From Zygnema circumcarinatum SAG 698-1b (lineage: Eukaryota; Plantae; Zygnematophyceae): DNA of 64,000 nucleotides. Position 1 is the stretch's first letter. Each line of letters opens with the position of its first letter. The position numbers and the translations under genes are program-made. Below are positions 36,168 to 43,883 of this stretch, in pieces. The notes below the pieces were generated by a model. That model did not search any database, had not been told where the DNA came from, and saw nothing but the letters and a program-made list of their open reading frames with translations. The stretch covers positions 2,046,001 through 2,110,000 of the forward strand of contig CM074811.1 of the NCBI GenBank assembly GCA_037447605.1, written 5' to 3'.

Positions 36168-37818
36168 ATGGCTGCGCGGCGCACTCGCTGGCTGCGGTCG
36201 TATTATGGCGTTGAAAACCTGCCGGAGGTGCTCAACCTTCTGGGAAAATTTTTCCTTTCGTCTTTTCTTCTCGGAATCATCAGATACAAACATCATGCTC
36301 TCTCAAATATCATCGTCAGATGTTTACAGGTTATGCCTTTTGAGGTAAGGGGCCATCCGGGTAGCCTGTTCTGCATACCATAATTTTTTGAATGAAGGCA
36401 TATGATGTTGTAGCCCCCCACTTTAGTTCAAGAAGTATTTCATTCATTTTGGCCGGTCGCTGAAGATGACTCAGAAGTTTGTGGCGTTATAAATTTCATG
36501 AAAATCCTCTTGAGAACTCATTTATCTTGCATTTCTAAACTACGTCTGTGCATTAGTTTTCCTTTGATGTTTAGGAATGTATCACCATTTCATCGCCGTT
36601 CCATTTCATTAGTAAATACTGCCTTAGAATCCATTTTTTTTAGGGTTGTTAATAATATGTCCGTACGGTAGCTCGTGTAAATGAAAAAATCCAAACTCAG
36701 CAAACATCTTGCAATTGACAACCTTGAATGCTATTATATGAAGTAGTGCGGCTTTTCGGCTCAGCATTCCTCCTCTCGACATCGTCTGTAAAACCTCTGC
36801 CTGTTTGCCTGCTGTGACTTCTAGACCGATCATGCTCCGATCCGCGCCGTTGGCATTTTGTTCGATTTCATCTCTTTGAGCCTATCTTCTGCTTAAAATT
36901 GCAGGTTCCGACTTTTGATCTCTATTTTGCGACCATTTTTGCGGGCATTTTGTCCTTGGGTTACTTGGTAGCCCTTGTGAATCACATTCAGACCTCTCTC
37001 TCCCTTCGCTTCCGCATGGCCCGCAAAATCGTTTCTAGAATATCAAATTGGTCTCGAGTTAGCTTAGTTCTGGATGTTGGCTGCGGACGAGGTATTCTGT
37101 TAAATACAGTCGCCATGAGGCTCCAAAAGGAGGGAGCAGGGGGGAGGGTCGTTGGAGTCGACACGTGGCAGAAGGGCACGGCAAAGGGCGGGTTAACAAT
37201 GGCTCGAACCCTAAAAGCAGCATCGACTGAAGGAGTAGCTCATTTAGTCACGTGCAAACTGGGAGACTATCGAGCTCTCCCCTTCACTGATAACTGCTTC
37301 GACGTCATCGTTTCGGCCCTTCGTCTACACACTCTGAAAGCGGTACTGTATTCTTCGGCCACAAGAATTCAAACCTGCTTCCTTTATTAGCTCATCAGAA
37401 GCTGCTACTCCTCAGAATCCTTTTTGCTGGTTGATCCTGTACTGAGGTGGAGGTATATTGGAATCTGCTGTCTCAAAAGAGTATTGACAGAAAATAGTGT
37501 TACCGGCAAACATGATCATGGTCGATTTTTTCTGCTGTATATCAGGTCTCATCGTCCAACAATGTGGAAGCGGCGAGTGCAGCAGAGAGGAGGCGAGCGC
37601 TTGCTGAAATGGTTCGAGTGGTAAAACCTGGGGGTCAGATCGTCATATGGGACATATTGCATGGGCAGGAATATGCTGATTACTTTCAAGAAGCGGGTCT
37701 GGAGGTTCTCGAACTCTCCAGCCAACTTCCAGCTTATCTGAAGCGAACCTACTTGGTCTCTGCAAGAAAATGCAAGGGACACCCTAGAGGGGAGGAGGGC
37801 CAAAATAGAGCTTCATGA
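36168..37818 (+). CDS. Class I SAM-dependent methyltransferase with an N-terminal membrane segment, 3 exons
   Basis: Motif I VLDVGCGRGILL, then GRVVGVDTW, GDYRALPFTDNCFDVIVS and ALAEMVRVVKPGGQIVIWD. Hydrophobic N-terminus. ATG at 36168 and TGA at 37816-37818. Confidence 0.88.
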
Positions 37819-38647
37819 CCATGGCCATGGCTTCGACGCAATGTTAGAAGGAGAGTTCGGCTTTGCTGAGGCATCATCCTTTCTCGGGGGAGCTGAGATT
37901 TAGGTTCAATTGAACGCTGTACATAACTCCTGCAGAGTAGCTATAAAAATGCAAAAAGGAAAGACTACTTTCTATTCACTTGGTTAACTCTTCTTCCTGC
38001 AGGCTTTGCTGCGATAGACTTGTTTGCCAACGCTGCATCCTGACACACTCATAGCTTATTGTTTTAGTGTGGAAATTGCACAGCACAGCTTATTCATAAA
38101 TTTCCATTCTCTCTTTCTTATAATTAAAGCAAAGAAGCAGCCTACGCAGTATACTTTTCTCGCCTTCCGAAAAACACATACATGGTCGCCCAAACGCATG
38201 CACTAACGCCACATCGCTTCTACTAAGCCTCCTTGAGCCACATCCTCTGCCTTTGTGCTCATGGTGAGCTAAAACAATATGGAAGGCGCTTCGAGAGATT
38301 CAGACCGTTGGATGGCTGCGATGGAGATCTCGGAACAAAACATGGCCACCACGACATCCAGACCCTTACAAACAGCCACGTGCATAAATGACCGTTGGAT
38401 ATGTCACGTGGCCTCATGTGAGAGGTGTCGGGTACCCGTGGTCAAAAAAAGAACGCTGGACCCAAACACGAGAGCCTCGGATGTTAGATGCCGTCATTTT
38501 CTCTCTGTTGTACATTCAGTCAAAAGTGGCTTAACATTAACATGAACTTCAACCTAAACCTTCAAACGCGCCATCAGGCCGCAGGAACAAGCAGAACGAG
38601 TAAAAGGAGGGAGGGGCAGCTGTGGAGCTCGTGGAAGCTTGGGAGCC

Positions 38648-41455
38648 ATGGCTGCCAAGAAGACGTGCTTGGTGAAGCTCAAGAAGGAGATGAGGAGCTT
38701 CATGAAGGAGCCACCTCCTTACATACCTGCGGTATGTGCAAGGATGATGATGAAGGCGGTTCCTACGGCAAGGCGCTGCTGTTGCTGCTGCTGCTTCGTC
38801 GACTTTCTCTCTTGCTGCTCCTTTTTTGTTCCTCCTTTTGCTATGATTCTCCTTCTACTCTTCCTTCCCATGCTGTGTTGCTCCGGCTGCTTCTCCTGGA
38901 CTCCTCCCGCCCGCCTGCTTTCTGATAAAGGGATTCAATGCGCTTGCACGCCGCTGGCCTCGCCTTGCAGGTGGCGATCAACGAGTCGGATATTTTGGAG
39001 TGGCATTTCTTGATTGAAGGGCCTGCAGGAACTCCCTATGAGGGGGGTTGGTACATTGGAAAGCTCAAGTTTCCGACCGACTATCCCTTCAAGCCTCCGG
39101 CTATAATGATGCTTACTCCGTCGGGGAGGTTCAAGACTGGGACTCGATTGTGTCTTTCTATGTCTGATTTTCATCCAGGTACGCCATACAATCCTAAGGC
39201 TTGCTTCATTCTAGGGGAGTTGCTCGCTTTTGTATTAGTTTGCAGGGAAAAAGTTGATTTGGCTGGTGGCTGGTTCATCCCCATTGGTTTCTCGGAATTC
39301 ACGTTATATCATAGCTTTTCATGTCCATGCAGTTGACTCTCCAAAGGTATTGCATGGGTACTTAACAAAATAGTTGTCCTTTCCTTAAGCCATGTGCTTT
39401 GCAACTTGATAGGATAATGAAACCGAGAGGTGGCAGCGCCTATTTATACGATTCGCACATTTTGACTAGCAATACATATGTCCGAGTGACTATTCCAAGG
39501 AGCTGTCCTAGAAAGTTGGAGATGAAGTGGTACTGAAACTGGCGAGCCAGCTTTGGATACGCAATTTAGCTGTTTTGAACCGAGCAATAAACTGTAGATA
39601 TCTCTAATTCTGATGATGGGCTATGGACCTATGGGGCGGCACATGGTTCAGAGACTTGGAATCCAATGTGGTAAGGCCAAATCATCTATCTCCAACAGGC
39701 CATGGAGTGTGTGGTAAAGGCCAGACTGCCTGAATGCTTAATGACATGTTTTTTCCCGGTAAGGGTGCGTGGTTGTCTTGCCTCTATTCGCATAGAGTTA
39801 GATGGCAACCTTTTGGCTCTCAATGCAGATGAAAATCTATGCGTATTGGAGCCTAGGGAGTTAGAGGCCAACCAAAGATTTCTAGACAGTGATGAGAAGA
39901 GGCGATGCTTGGAGAACAAGTAAGCGGGGATAGTTAAGCGCTATTTTCTCTCTCATGTGTGTGATTTTTGAATGAAGTGAGCTTCGCTGCTTCACATATG
40001 CTAACTTAACGCATTGAGGGGAGTTTCGTGGCTTTTGTAGGTCGGTGGCATCTGTCCTTACAGGACTGCTTTCGTTTATGTTAGAGAGCACGGCGACAAC
40101 TGGTTCTATGGAGAGCACGGTCAGAATCTGAACCTAAAAACCTAAACCCTGAAACCCTAAAGCATGTAATTATTCAACTCTAAACCCTGCAACCCTAGAA
40201 CCTAAAACCCCCACTCTAAACCCTACACCCTAAACTCTAGACCCGAGAAGTTCATGAAACCCTTAAAAAAAAACCCTTTTAACTCTGAAACCCTAACCCT
40301 GAAACTGTAAACCCGGAATCTGAAAATTTTACAAACTCTAAAACCCTGAATTGAATGCCTGAAAGCCTAAAACCTTAACCCCTGAAACCTTAAAACCTGA
40401 AATCCTGAGTTCCTACAAACCCAACACCCTGAATCCTGAAATTTAAAACCCTGAAACCTTAGAACCTGCTTCCTGTCGCCCCATAGTATGTTTCCCCTGC
40501 ACTGTTCAGGTGGAGGAGAAGAGACAAATAGCCGCAGAGTCAGGCCAAAAGCTCCTCCAAAATGCTCACTATCGCAGTCTTTTCCCGGAGCTTCCGAATT
40601 TGATTGATAGGCAGAAGCAGGGAGGGAGGGAAAAGGCGGAGTTGGGAGAAGAGACTGAACAGGAAGGCGGGCTGGGAGAGGCTTCAGACACAAGCAGCCG
40701 TTTGGAGGAGGGGCATAGAGAAGCTGATACGGAGCAAATTAGAGGGGTTGAAGAGCTTATTGCTGTCGAGGTGCAAACGTCCAGCAGTGAATCAGCTGTT
40801 GGACAGGAGGGAGAGGGAGAGGGACAGGGAGGGGGAGAGGGAGGAGGAGAGGGAGAGGAAGAGGAAGGCAGCAGGCGGGAGCAAACGGGCGCAGCAAGCA
40901 TTGAAGAGGAAGTATTTGAGGAAGCGAGGCAAAGTTTCGAGGAGGAAGGTAATGAAATTTCATGGTTTGACTGTTCTGGGGAGCCCAATGGTTGATATCT
41001 CGCTTGTGCTTGTAAGGAGCTAAGTCGGCGGTCCTTGCAGCTGAATGGCACTTGTTAGGATGTTTTTCTTCCAGGTGGAAAACTTGAGGAGGCCAGCACA
41101 AGCACAAGCACAAGCACAAGCATAAGCATAAGCAGAGGCAGTCCTTTGACTGAAATTGGCCCAAACCCAGAGGCCGGCGGGTTTTCGGAGTCTTCTGCGG
41201 AAGCAACAGTGAGGCGTTTGGAGGATCTGCTGGCACACTGCCACGTGGCACTGCAGCAGGATACCCCAGAGAAGAGGGGCTTTGAACGAGGAGTGTGTCT
41301 ATTGCGATGTGGAGAGGTAGAGGAGGCGACGCGAGCCTTCATGGGAGGGCTTGCAGGGGTGGTACGTAATTCAACACAGTCCATGATATTGCTGTCATCG
41401 ATAACGTTTTGGGAGAGAGGTGGGGAGAGGGGGGGGGGGGGGGGGNNNNNNNNNN

Positions 41456-41493
<38 letters not shown>

Positions 41494-43310
41494 AGAAACA
41501 GACGAGAACCTCTAAAGACTCAAGCCGTAGTTGTTTCGTTCTTCTGCCTCATTTCTAGTTCCTTCAAAATCATGGATTCAGCAACGCGTCGTAAATAATG
41601 ATCAGGAAAGTTTGTGCAACCAAGGTCCATTCAGCGGTAGACATGTGCCACAACCATTTTGTGATTAACAAAAACGGATCTGAGCTCATCTTATTGCTGG
41701 TTTGCTGGTCAACACTGGTTTTGATTTTGTGCTTGATGCGATTCAGGGGGGGTCCTCCTTTTCGAGTTGGAAGGATCTTGTGAAAGGAGTGGACAGTGTG
41801 AAGGCGATTGTACTTGAAGCAAATGCACTGCTTGAAGACTCAAACGAGGGTGATCCTGCATCAGTCCTTGCTCTTTTGGCTCCGATTCTTCAATACACAT
41901 CCCCGAAAGCGCCTCATTTCTTAATGGTTAAGGTCAGTACATCAATTTTCAACACAGCCAAGAAAAAGCCCTAGTATCTTCCAGAATGCTGAACTAGCAG
42001 CGAATTACTAGAACGTGAACGAACCTAATGAAAATACTGATTGTATTGGATGATACCTCAACAGTCTGCAAAGCAAAGCAGCGTACGCTGAACAACTTAA
42101 ATGTGAGCGGTTCCCATTGATTGCCACGCTCTACAATCCATGATTCGTTGCGGCTAACCGCTAAAACGCAAAAGAAGCTGCCAACCTTGATTTCCCATCG
42201 CCTCTTTTTTGGTTCATTCATGTCGCTCTTTTCTTAAATTTGCAGGCCTCTGCTCTCCTCAGAATGGGGGACTTGGAGATGAGCATTTCAGTGCTAGAAG
42301 CAGCGTTGGAGCTCGCATCCTCCGATGCACTTTCAACCCCACTACCGGAACTTAACAGTTCTGTCTTTCGCCCCATCTCCAGCCAGGAGGTTAGTTTTCC
42401 AGCTGCTTTCTGTATGCTCAAGCATCTTTATATTGCACTTTTAGTATGGGAGGCGGCAGGAGTGATCGAAGTCCTATTTGTTAGTCTATACATTGTTGTT
42501 CACCCGCCCTTTCTCCTTTAACTTTTTTTTCTTTGTCTGTTTTTCTTATTGCTGCTTTGCAGGTTCTGAATGTCCTCGCCAGAACTCGGACTGCTTTGCG
42601 CCATAGGAGTCGAGGAAACGACCATTTTCGCAAGAAGAGCTATTCCATGGCTGTGAAGGCGTATGACAATGCTTTGGCAGCGGAGGAACGGTGTGCCTCT
42701 CTTCACTGTAGCCGCGCTACCGCCCTGGCTGCCATGCAAAGGTGGGTGCTCAATGCTCCCTTACACCCACTCACACTGACGGGAAACCTGGAAGGTAGAG
42801 AAGTGAACAGAACGTGACACTACTTGAGAGAACGGAGAGTGAGAGAGTGAAGGAACGCAAAAAAAAAGTATTCAAAGGGGCAGATCACTGTGTGACTACA
42901 TCCCACCCTGTACCCCGGGGGGGCCACCAGACCTTAGCCAGCCCATTGAGTACACACAAGGAAGTTGGATGCATAAAAGTGGAAAAGTATATCTGCAGCA
43001 GTTTTTACCACCATCCGCCCCCCTCACTCCCGCCACTTCCCCCTCTCTCTCTCTCCCCTCCACTCTCTCCCTCCCTCTCTCACTCCCTCTCCAAGTGTGC
43101 AGGCATGAGGAGGCCTTGGCTGCCTGCAAACGAGCCCTTGAGCTTTTCAATGGCCACGCAAAAGCAAGGAGGCGGCAAGCAGAGTCCCTCGCAGCCCTGG
43201 GCCGGCACACAGAGGCAGCAGCAGAGTTCCAAAAACTTCTGATCAGTTTTCCGGAGGACAGAAAACTGTTGGAGCTTGCAGAGCGCCAGCAAAAGCTGGC
43301 GGCTTCATGA
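38648..43310 (+). CDS. Ubc6/UBC32-34-type ubiquitin-conjugating enzyme fused to a C-terminal TPR array, 10 exons, about 610 aa
   Basis: Exons 38648-38731, 38971-39178, 39652-39670, 40041-40119, 40510-40948, 41075-41361, 41747-41932, 42246-42389, 42563-42741 and 43103-43310. All introns are GT-AG and phase-compatible (total 1833 nt). E2 core [41 protein letters not shown] has the catalytic Cys. TPRs: RSRGNDHFRKKSYSMAVKAYDNAL / LHCSRATALAAMQRHEEALAACKRAL / KARRRQAESLAALGRHTEAAAEFQKL. Confidence 0.85.
40131..40460. repeat. Degenerate interstitial telomere-like (AAACCCT) repeat in intron 4 of the E2-TPR gene
   Basis: Many aaccctaa/aaccctga/aacctaaa units. Confidence 0.75.
41446..41455. other. 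Assembly gap (10 N) within intron 6 of the E2-TPR gene
   Basis: N run inside a poly-G tract. Confidence 0.99.
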
Positions 43311-43883
43311 AGCCATGGCCGTGGTCCAACAGTTCCTCCTTTTTTTGTTTTTTTGATTTTGTAACAAATTCCTGAGATAATCGTGAGGATAATTTCCTGG
43401 TTAGGGATTATCGCTCGTCAGCCAAGCTTTTCTCTTGAATATTGATTTTCCTCACCTCTTTGGAATGGCAGAACACCATGCATGAGTGCGTGAATACATG
43501 CATGAATGGAAGGAATAATTCATGTGTTATTCCTTACAATGTGGTTTTTAACCTACAGGGCTGACAGCTTTTCGAACAGATATCTGTTCTCAATCGACCT
43601 ACCCAATCATCAGTCCCTGTGATGATCAAGTTCAACTGTCCAGTCAAGTTCATACAAGGAGCCAATCACATGCTGCGGAGAGCCTCAGATGTGGAAACGC
43701 ACCTCCTATCAAATCAAAAGGAAAGCAGTGAACAGGACTAACCTGTTGCTTGCTTACAAACCTAAACCTAAGTTTAACACGAACCCTGACCTAATCGTCA
43801 CCCTAATCGCGAGACTCTCACTCTAACCCTAGTCCTGCCCAAGGAACCACCAATTCCTGCCTCAAAAGTCCCTTGAAGAGCCC

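What the first reader, a model, noticed from the sequence alone, without database searches (positions are those of the whole stretch)
38648..43310. Ubc6-type E2 enzyme fused to a TPR array, with no tail anchor: a candidate soluble chaperone-coupled ubiquitin-conjugating enzyme
Seen: ten GT-AG exons join in phase into one ORF of about 610 aa. It comprises an intact Ubc6/UBC32-34-type E2 domain ([16 protein letters not shown]; its last helix VEEKRQIAAES...YRSLFPE lies in the 40510 exon), an acidic/Gly linker and then TPR motifs. No ATG or intergenic space separates the two halves, and I see no hydrophobic C-terminal helix. Known: Ubc6/UBE2J/plant UBC32-34 are ER tail-anchored ERAD E2s, and CHIP couples a TPR chaperone-binding module to ubiquitination through a U-box E3. 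Inference: this architecture may place an E2 directly on Hsp70/Hsp90 clients or another TPR partner away from the ER membrane. I do not know of a described E2-TPR fusion of this type.
Basis: partly seen in the sequence, partly recalled or inferred. Interest (0 to 1): 0.85.

Follow-up and report, generated by a model that had tools for sequence, protein, structure and literature searches.

The report
Soluble Ubc6-type E2 fused to TPR
This is a real, spliced and expressed algal gene for a ubiquitin-conjugating enzyme of the Ubc6/UBE2J2 type that has swapped its membrane anchor for a chaperone-docking TPR domain; the same fusion is kept in many green algae but has not been studied, so it offers a testable new link between chaperones and protein tagging.

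Summary
Ten GT-AG exons (38648-43310, + strand) join in frame into a 610-aa protein with no hydrophobic tail. Spliced RNA contigs from four public runs support introns 1-8. These include the E2/linker join (40119/40510), the linker/TPR join (40948/41075) and the join across the N gap (41361/41747), so the gap is only a broken poly-G run inside intron 6. The intron 9 joint was not listed; it rests on a gap-free fit to orthologues.

The N-terminal half is a J2-family E2. It matches Ubc6 (9EN5, 7e-31) and keeps the GRF arginine, Cys89, His96 and the Thr-flap. The C-terminal 125 aa form a three-repeat TPR of the EEVD carboxylate-clamp class (Hop, RPAP3, SGTA, PP5, CHIP, OM64).

The fusion is a conserved family: Klebsormidium, Closterium, Mesostigma, Trebouxiophyceae, Pycnococcus and the cryptist Goniomonas. 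No land-plant member was found. On a quick tree these E2s fall in a tail-less J2 subclade.

I found no paper on it. Database entries read "hypothetical" or "E2 34".

Most likely it is a soluble E2 docked on Hsp70/Hsp90 tails. The architecture is shown; the partner and activity are inferred.

The parts
38648..38731 (+). Exon 1: start codon and E2 helix 1 (MAAKKTCLVKLKKEM...)
   Evidence: model. Intron 1 joint 38731/38971 in X2, X3 and X4. The N-terminus aligns with all orthologues.
38971..39178 (+). Exon 2: UBC core with the GRF loop (Arg81), catalytic Cys89 (codon 39151-39153), Ser93, Asp94, Phe95 and His96
   Evidence: Pfam UQ_con 6e-13. Gap-free match to Ubc6 9EN5 at 7e-31 and to UBE2J2 2F4W. 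Residue mapping.
39652..39670 (+). Exon 3: 19-nt microexon (ETWNPMW)
   Evidence: Joints 39178/39652 and 39670/40041 in X1-X3. The same microexon is present in an environmental relative, L001 7752-7772.
40041..40119 (+). Exon 4: crossover helix and J2-type Thr-flap (ESTATTGSMEST)
   Evidence: The only PDB hits are UBE2J2 and Ubc6, both gap-free.
40510..40948 (+). Exon 5: last E2 helices (to about 40614), then an acidic/Gly-rich low-complexity linker. This single exon bridges the two halves.
   Evidence: Open frame throughout. Joints to exon 4 and exon 6 appear in all four runs. The (GAGGGA)n repeat is. The equivalent segment is disordered in the orthologue model.
41075..41361 (+). Exon 6: end of the linker (STSTSTSISIS) and the first TPR-like helices (aa 316-372)
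   Evidence: Joints. Weak match to the family TPR profile (0.039). Aligns with the closest orthologue P0267.
41362..41746 (+). Intron 6, holding the assembly gap (N at 41446-41455) inside a poly-G run
   Evidence: Sequence and TRF. The joint 41361/41747 is seen in spliced RNA contigs of X1 and X4.
41747..42389 (+). Exons 7 (41747-41932) and 8 (42246-42389): conserved helical hairpin 'GDPxxxL...LxKAxALxxxGDLxxA' upstream of the clamp module
   Evidence: Joints. Conserved in the family alignment. TPR_8 hit on exon 8. Confident helix pair in the orthologue model.
42563..43310 (+). Exons 9 (42563-42741) and 10 (43103-43310): three-repeat TPR clamp module plus capping helix (aa 486-609), then the stop codon. 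Clamp positions are R497, N501, S532, K562 and R566.
   Evidence: The family TPR profile, built without the window, hits at 9e-40. Pfam TPR hits. Clamp table. The intron 8 joint is seen in four runs; the intron 9 joint is not listed.

Best explanation
The locus is one expressed gene for a soluble, probably cytosolic, ubiquitin-conjugating enzyme of the Ubc6/UBE2J2 (J2) family. The C-terminal tail anchor typical of that family is replaced by a disordered acidic tether and a TPR domain of the two-carboxylate-clamp type.

Proposed mechanism:
1. E1 charges Cys89 with ubiquitin.
2. The TPR clamp docks on the free acidic C-terminus (EEVD-type) of cytosolic Hsp70 or Hsp90.
3. The flexible linker lets the reactive J2-type E2~Ub reach chaperone-bound clients, or the chaperone itself. 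This may happen with a RING E3 or, like an E2/E3 hybrid, without one.
4. The J2 active site (His96, GRF loop, Thr-flap) would also permit attack on Ser/Thr.

What is shown: the gene structure, the fused mRNA junctions, the domain identities, conservation of the catalytic and clamp residues, and conservation of the fusion across green algae.

What is inferred: the partner (Hsp70/Hsp90), cytosolic location, enzymatic activity and substrates.
For: - Gene model and absence of a transmembrane segment.
- Spliced joints for introns 1-8, including both E2-TPR bridging junctions and the gap-spanning one.
- E2 half: Ubc6 9EN5 at 7e-31 and UBE2J2 hits. Arg79, Arg85, Cys87, Ser91, Asp92 and His94 of Ubc6 are all matched, and the Thr-flap is matched. 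The role of these motifs comes from PMC11649903.
- TPR half: the family profile hits the window at 9e-40. Its best single-domain PDB matches are EEVD-binding co-chaperone TPRs: SPAG1, Hop, RPAP3, SGTA, TOM70, PP5, CHIP and OM64, at about 1e-17 to 1e-25.
- Clamp positions equivalent to Hop Lys229, Asn233, Asn264, Lys301 and Arg305 (PMC2865030) are K/N/N/K/R in most members and R/N/S/K/R in the window.
- Orthologue model: the TPR has pLDDT 91-98, and the linker is below 50. It superposes on OM64 TPR (TMt 0.90, 1.4 A), on RPAP3 TPR2 bound to the Hsp90 peptide (0.91, 1.4 A), and on Ubc6/UBE2J2 (0.80-0.88).
- The fusion is conserved in Klebsormidium, Closterium, Mesostigma, Trebouxiophyceae, Pycnococcus and Goniomonas, and in three independent transcriptome assemblies.
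Against: - No binding, activity or localisation data exist.
- The window's clamp has Ser in place of the Asn that is invariant in the 13 sequences of the module alignment, and Arg in place of Lys. The Closterium orthologue has Ala at the first Asn. Clamp strength in zygnematophytes may therefore be relaxed.
- Clamp-type TPRs also occur in membrane receptors (TOM70, OM64), so the fold class does not fix the cellular site or the partner.
- The structure model is of the Klebsormidium orthologue, not the window protein. Its pTM of 0.43 gives no inter-domain geometry.
- No single RNA record spans the whole CDS, and the intron 9 joint was not listed.
Confidence: 0.55

Rival explanations
1. The protein is real, but the TPR docks the E2 on a non-chaperone partner with an acidic C-terminus or another motif. 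Candidates are an ER or organelle membrane protein, or an E3. In this reading the TPR functionally replaces the tail anchor and keeps the enzyme in an ERAD-like or organelle-surface pathway.
For: J2 E2s normally work at membranes with Doa10/Hrd1-type ligases (PMC11649903). The nearest TPR folds include the organelle receptors OM64 and TOM70. The window and Closterium proteins have imperfect clamps.
Against: The full K/N/N/K/R clamp is kept in most family members. The strongest profile matches are soluble Hsp70/Hsp90 co-chaperones. OM64 and TOM70 themselves use this domain to bind chaperone tails.
Confidence: 0.25
2. The TPR array acts mainly in cis or in self-assembly. It would autoinhibit or orient the E2, or oligomerise it, for example by gripping the protein's own acidic linker, rather than recruiting substrates.
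For: The window's linker is very acidic (EEEEG, EEVFEE...). TPRs can bind internal acidic segments.
Against: Linker sequence and length are not conserved across the family, whereas the clamp is. Carboxylate clamps need a free C-terminal carboxylate, and the protein ends in ...KLAAS. The model gives no confident inter-domain contact.
Confidence: 0.1
3. Artefact: two neighbouring genes (an E2 and a TPR protein) have been merged by the reading, by read-through transcription, or by a misassembly at the N gap.
For: There is an assembly gap inside the locus. No single contig covers both halves. The runs are labelled only as 'RNA?'.
Against: Exon 5 alone carries the end of the E2 fold and the linker in one open frame, and it is spliced to both neighbours in four runs. 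The gap-spanning joint is seen in two runs. The same fusion is present in more than 15 other species or clusters, including de novo transcript assemblies.
Confidence: 0.03

Closest known systems
Ubc6 / UBE2J2 / plant UBC32-34 (J2-family tail-anchored ERAD E2s)
   Same: The UBC fold carries the J2 signatures: GRF loop, the RxCLSxSD(F/Y)HP active-site insertion with the general-base His, and the Thr-flap. The best PDB matches are 9EN5 and 2F4W.
   Different: There is no C-terminal transmembrane anchor. About 445 extra residues carry a linker and TPRs. On a quick tree it falls in a separate tail-less subclade, while Closterium also has J2 E2s that end in a hydrophobic tail and sit elsewhere on the tree.
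CHIP/STUB1 (TPR clamp + U-box E3)
   Same: Both share the same logic: a three-repeat EEVD-clamp TPR joined to a ubiquitination module. The CHIP TPR is among the profile hits at about 1e-18.
   Different: Here the catalytic partner is an E2, not an E3. The TPR is C-terminal rather than N-terminal. There is no U-box and no coiled-coil dimeriser.
E2s with built-in substrate- or partner-binding regions (UBE2O, BIRC6; from general knowledge)
   Same: A UBC domain is embedded in a larger protein that could select targets itself.
   Different: These are a different E2 family with different accessory domains. E3-independent activity of the present protein is untested.
Clamp-type TPR co-chaperones and receptors (Hop/Sti1, RPAP3, SGTA, PP5, TOM70, Toc64/OM64)
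   Same: Three TPRs plus a capping helix, with conserved K/N/N/K/R clamp positions. Rmsd is 1.4-1.5 A to OM64, RPAP3 TPR2 and PP5 for the orthologue model.
   Different: None of them carries an E2 domain. The window copy has Ser at the second Asn and Arg at the first Lys.

Membership tests
J2 family of E2 enzymes (Ubc6/UBE2J2) | UBC fold with a catalytic Cys | tested here: met
   UQ_con at 6e-13. Cys89 aligns to Ubc6 Cys87. The orthologue fold has TMt 0.80-0.88 to 9EN5 and 2F4W.
J2 family of E2 enzymes (Ubc6/UBE2J2) | GRF loop in place of the HPN motif | tested here: met
   TPSGRF, with Arg81 matching Ubc6 Arg79, and a gap-free alignment. The motif definition is from PMC11649903.
J2 family of E2 enzymes (Ubc6/UBE2J2) | Three-residue insertion after the Cys, with a conserved His | tested here: met
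   [11 protein letters not shown]. Ser93, Asp94, Phe95 and His96 match Ubc6 Ser91, Asp92, Tyr93 and His94.
J2 family of E2 enzymes (Ubc6/UBE2J2) | Thr-flap linking helix 2 to helix 4 (specific to J2, not J1) | tested here: met
   Exon 4 (ESTATTGSMEST) aligns gap-free only to UBE2J2 and Ubc6.
J2 family of E2 enzymes (Ubc6/UBE2J2) | C-terminal tail anchor and ER membrane location | tested here: not met
   The maximum 19-residue hydropathy is 1.2, and none is at the C-terminus. All TPR-fusion orthologues likewise lack a hydrophobic tail. Localisation itself cannot be tested with these tools.
Two-carboxylate-clamp TPR domains (Hsp70/Hsp90 EEVD binders) | Three TPR motifs plus a C-terminal capping helix | tested here: met
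   The family profile hits window aa 486-609 at 9e-40. The orthologue model shows 7 helices at pLDDT 91-98 and rmsd 1.4 A to RPAP3 TPR2 and OM64.
Two-carboxylate-clamp TPR domains (Hsp70/Hsp90 EEVD binders) | Clamp residues Lys/Asn/Asn/Lys/Arg (Hop TPR2A 229/233/264/301/305) | tested here: inconclusive
   The family is mostly K/N/N/K/R. The window has R497, N501, S532, K562 and R566: three identical, one conservative change, and one Asn-to-Ser change.
Two-carboxylate-clamp TPR domains (Hsp70/Hsp90 EEVD binders) | Binding of an EEVD-COOH peptide | not testable with these tools
   Needs ITC, fluorescence polarisation or pull-down.

The most novel reading that the evidence does not exclude
This would be an E3-independent, chaperone-guided E2, a minimal 'CHIP in one chain'. 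The TPR clamp parks a hyper-reactive J2-type E2~Ub on Hsp70/Hsp90, so that stalled clients are tagged directly on Lys or on Ser/Thr. It may include unimported organelle precursors. The module would be ancient in the green lineage and lost in land plants.
Probability: 0.2. Interest if true: 0.85.

Novelty: new variant of a known kind. Interest (0 to 1): 0.62.

Why it matters
E2 enzymes of the Ubc6/UBE2J2 family are textbook membrane-anchored ERAD components, and chaperone-linked ubiquitination is thought to run through E3s such as CHIP. A conserved soluble J2-type E2 carrying its own chaperone-type TPR clamp would be a direct E2-chaperone coupling.

It can be tested simply with recombinant protein, EEVD peptides and clamp or Cys mutants. 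The J2 active site can also modify Ser/Thr, so the protein could reveal non-lysine tagging of chaperone clients.

Its distribution also bears on how the protein-quality-control toolkit changed at the origin of land plants. It is found in chlorophytes, streptophyte algae and a cryptist, with no land-plant hit in these searches.

Tried and rejected
- The spliced 610-aa protein could not be handed to the database, Pfam, fold or structure tools, because it has no reference. I searched exon by exon and used orthologues by id instead. The window protein itself is not in the protein collections.
- The search for homologous proteins on the TPR region of P0009 alone found almost nothing (6 hits). It missed even known family members, so it says nothing about the origin of the TPR.
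- The protein-atlas search gave only generic TPR and E2 clusters.
- The search of earlier findings had nothing near the locus or on E2/TPR. Its genome-wide notes only suggested a zygnematophyte alga.
- The environmental contig L001 is a close relative with the same first three exons, but it ends before the TPR exons. It does not bear on the fusion.
- Rfam found nothing in the window.
- Five literature searches for an E2-TPR fusion found no description. Only open-access text is covered. Two other searches failed on term syntax.
- Misassembly at the gap and a two-gene merge were considered and rejected on the RNA joints and the orthologues.
Full report
**Observation**

Ten exons on the + strand are all bounded by GT-AG: 38648-38731, 38971-39178, 39652-39670, 40041-40119, 40510-40948, 41075-41361, 41747-41932, 42246-42389, 42563-42741 and 43103-43310. 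They join into 1833 nt and 610 codons with a single terminal stop.

The first ATG follows an in-frame stop, and the N-terminus matches all orthologues. After Met102, inside the E2 domain, there is no in-frame Met until residue 366. The highest 19-residue hydropathy mean is 1.2 and lies in the E2 crossover helix. There is no C-terminal hydrophobic helix, no CaaX box and no N-terminal Gly.

**Transcript evidence**

Four public runs hold the locus. Their assembled contigs laid on 38400-43600 show GT..AG joints at exactly the predicted borders for introns 1 to 8:
- The E2-to-linker junction 40119/40510 and the linker-to-TPR junction 40948/41075 are present in all four runs.
- The junction 41361/41747, which jumps the N gap, is present in two runs. 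One is a 590-nt contig with 188 nt beyond the joint.

Exon 5 is a single exon that holds both the last E2 helices and the linker, and it is spliced to both sides. The two halves are therefore parts of one mRNA.

The gap (41446-41455) lies in intron 6, in the middle of a poly-G run. It does not disturb order, orientation or frame.

Limits:
- The contigs are short, so no single record covers the E2 half through to the TPR half.
- The runs also hold unspliced or DNA-derived sequence (intron depth about 10-20 against exon depth about 100-180).
- The joint for intron 9 was not listed, because a CT-rich repeat next to exon 10 was masked. That splice rests on the depth step and on a gap-free fit of ...AAMQR|HEEALAAC... 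to a conserved TPR helix in every orthologue.

Minor isoforms skip the 19-nt microexon, which shifts the frame, or use a donor at 39757.

**The E2 half**

Exon 2 hits Pfam UQ_con. Among solved structures it aligns best, and without gaps, to yeast Ubc6 (9EN5, 7e-31) and human UBE2J2 (2F4W).

Swarnkar et al. 2024 (PMC11649903) define the J2 family by three features:
- a GRF loop in place of HPN;
- a three-residue insertion after the catalytic Cys, carrying a general-base His;
- a Thr-flap.

All three are present. Arg81, Arg87, Cys89, Ser93, Asp94, Phe95 and His96 correspond to Ubc6 Arg79, Arg85, Cys87, Ser91, Asp92, Tyr93 and His94. Exon 4 (…FMLESTATTGSMEST) matches only UBE2J2 and Ubc6 in the PDB. 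The enzyme therefore looks catalytically competent and of the serine-capable J2 type.

**The TPR half**

Pfam TPR models hit exons 8, 9 and 10. A profile of the C-terminal module was built from 13 orthologues without the window (A1). It matches window residues 486-609 at 9e-40.

Against the PDB, its best single-domain matches are the three-repeat EEVD-binding co-chaperone domains: SPAG1, Hop/Sti1, RPAP3, SGTA, TOM70, PP5, CHIP and OM64.

The five positions of the two-carboxylate clamp are Hop TPR2A Lys229, Asn233, Asn264, Lys301 and Arg305 (PMC2865030). They are K/N/N/K/R in most family members and R497/N501/S532/K562/R566 in the window. No variant letters were reported for that exon in the RNA contigs.

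An AlphaFold2 model of the Klebsormidium orthologue with the family alignment gives:
- a confident E2 domain;
- a disordered linker (pLDDT below 50);
- a helical hairpin;
- a very confident three-TPR-plus-cap domain (pLDDT 91-98).

Foldseek places the two halves on Ubc6/UBE2J2 (TMt 0.80-0.88) and on OM64 TPR, RPAP3 TPR2 with the Hsp90 peptide, and PP5 TPR (rmsd 1.4-1.5 A). The window protein itself could not be folded, because its spliced sequence has no reference.

**Relatives**

A full HMMER scan with exon 2 and two word-indexed searches show that the fusion is a family. Names were looked up.

| Organism | Protein id | Length |
|---|---|---|
| Klebsormidium nitens | P0009 | 458 aa |
| Closterium sp. 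NIES-68 | P0151 | 608 aa |
| Mesostigma viride | P0008 | 606 aa |
| Trebouxia spp. | P0152, P0007, P0006 | 424, 381 and 267 aa |
| Myrmecia bisecta | P0154 | 433 aa |
| Elliptochloris bilobata | P0157 | 423 aa |
| Pycnococcus provasolii | P0274 (cluster P0093), named "E2 34" | 402 aa |
| Goniomonas avonlea (cryptist) | P0026 | 377 aa |
| Transcriptome isoform closest to the window | P0267 | 747 aa |

Several unnamed metagenomic clusters also belong.

All members share the same layout: the E2 domain, a variable linker, a conserved 'GDPE…LKAxAxxxGDL' hairpin, and the clamp module. Three of them come from de novo transcript assemblies, which is independent evidence that the fusion is transcribed as one unit. 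No land-plant member appeared, even when the length window excluded ordinary J2 E2s. That is absence from these searches, not proof of loss.

A quick maximum-likelihood tree of 203 E2 domains puts all TPR fusions in one clade of 42 sequences (SH-aLRT 97). They sit there with other tail-less J2-like E2s and apart from the tail-anchored ones. Closterium also has J2 E2s that end in a hydrophobic tail, in another clade. The TPR form is therefore an old paralogue rather than a recent accident. The tree is short (156 columns), unrooted and built from a biased sample, so a single origin of the fusion is allowed but not shown.

**Mechanism**

The most economical reading is a soluble J2-type E2 tethered by a flexible linker to a chaperone-tail clamp. 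This is the CHIP idea with an E2 in place of the U-box. The J2 active site is intrinsically reactive (PMC11649903), which makes direct, E3-poor tagging of chaperone-bound clients conceivable. That part is speculation.

The main rival is docking on a different acidic C-terminus or at an organelle surface. It stays open because the clamp fold does not name its ligand, and because the window's clamp is slightly degenerate. A cis-regulatory role is less likely, since the linker is not conserved. A merge or misassembly artefact is essentially excluded.

**Novelty**

Five full-text searches found no paper describing an E2-TPR fusion. Only open-access literature was covered. The proteins exist in databases as "hypothetical protein", "UBC core domain-containing protein" or "ubiquitin-conjugating enzyme E2 34".

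I therefore rate it a new variant of a known kind. The parts are known. The conserved combination is undescribed, and it removes a defining feature of the family, the tail anchor.

Notes from other agents suggest the genome is a zygnematophyte alga. That fits the nearest homologues, but I did not verify it.

Noticed in passing
window 40120-40509 (intron 4): The intron is filled with degenerate telomere-like CCCTAAA/CCTGAAA repeats. Many RNA/DNA contigs break here and continue into unlike sequence, so the repeat is dispersed in the genome.
   Followed up: no
window 39652-39670: This 19-nt microexon encodes ETWNPMW in the E2 active-site region and is also present in an environmental relative (L001 7752-7772). 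Minor transcripts skip it (39178->40041, which shifts the frame) or use an alternative donor at 39757.
   Followed up: partly
window 40807-40864 and 41095-41134: Two coding microsatellites, (GAGGGA)n and (AGCACA)n, encode the GEGEGG and STSTST runs of the linker. They are likely to vary in length.
   Followed up: no
P0165, P0028, P0162, P0168, P0177, P0181 and others: The sister clade of tail-less J2-type E2s, partly from marine protist (MMETSP) transcriptomes, carries a different conserved C-terminal module of about 60 aa ('GLxxRxDLNGxxGxV…gRxxVrl…NLE'). It has no Pfam match. It looks like another adaptor swapped in for the tail anchor.
   Followed up: partly
P0319, P0323, P0326-P0338; atlas rows 2-3: J2-like E2 domains fused to RING-variant (PF12906) and other domains occur in dinoflagellates, haptophytes and giant viruses. 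These are E2-E3 single-chain fusions.
   Followed up: no
window 36899-37390 (+): An upstream ORF carries a SAM-methyltransferase-like motif (LDVGCGRGILL). It is probably an exon of the neighbouring gene.
   Followed up: no
window 41419-41493: The assembly gap sits inside a homopolymer G run of at least 60 nt in intron 6. This is probably a sequencing dropout rather than a scaffold join.
   Followed up: partly
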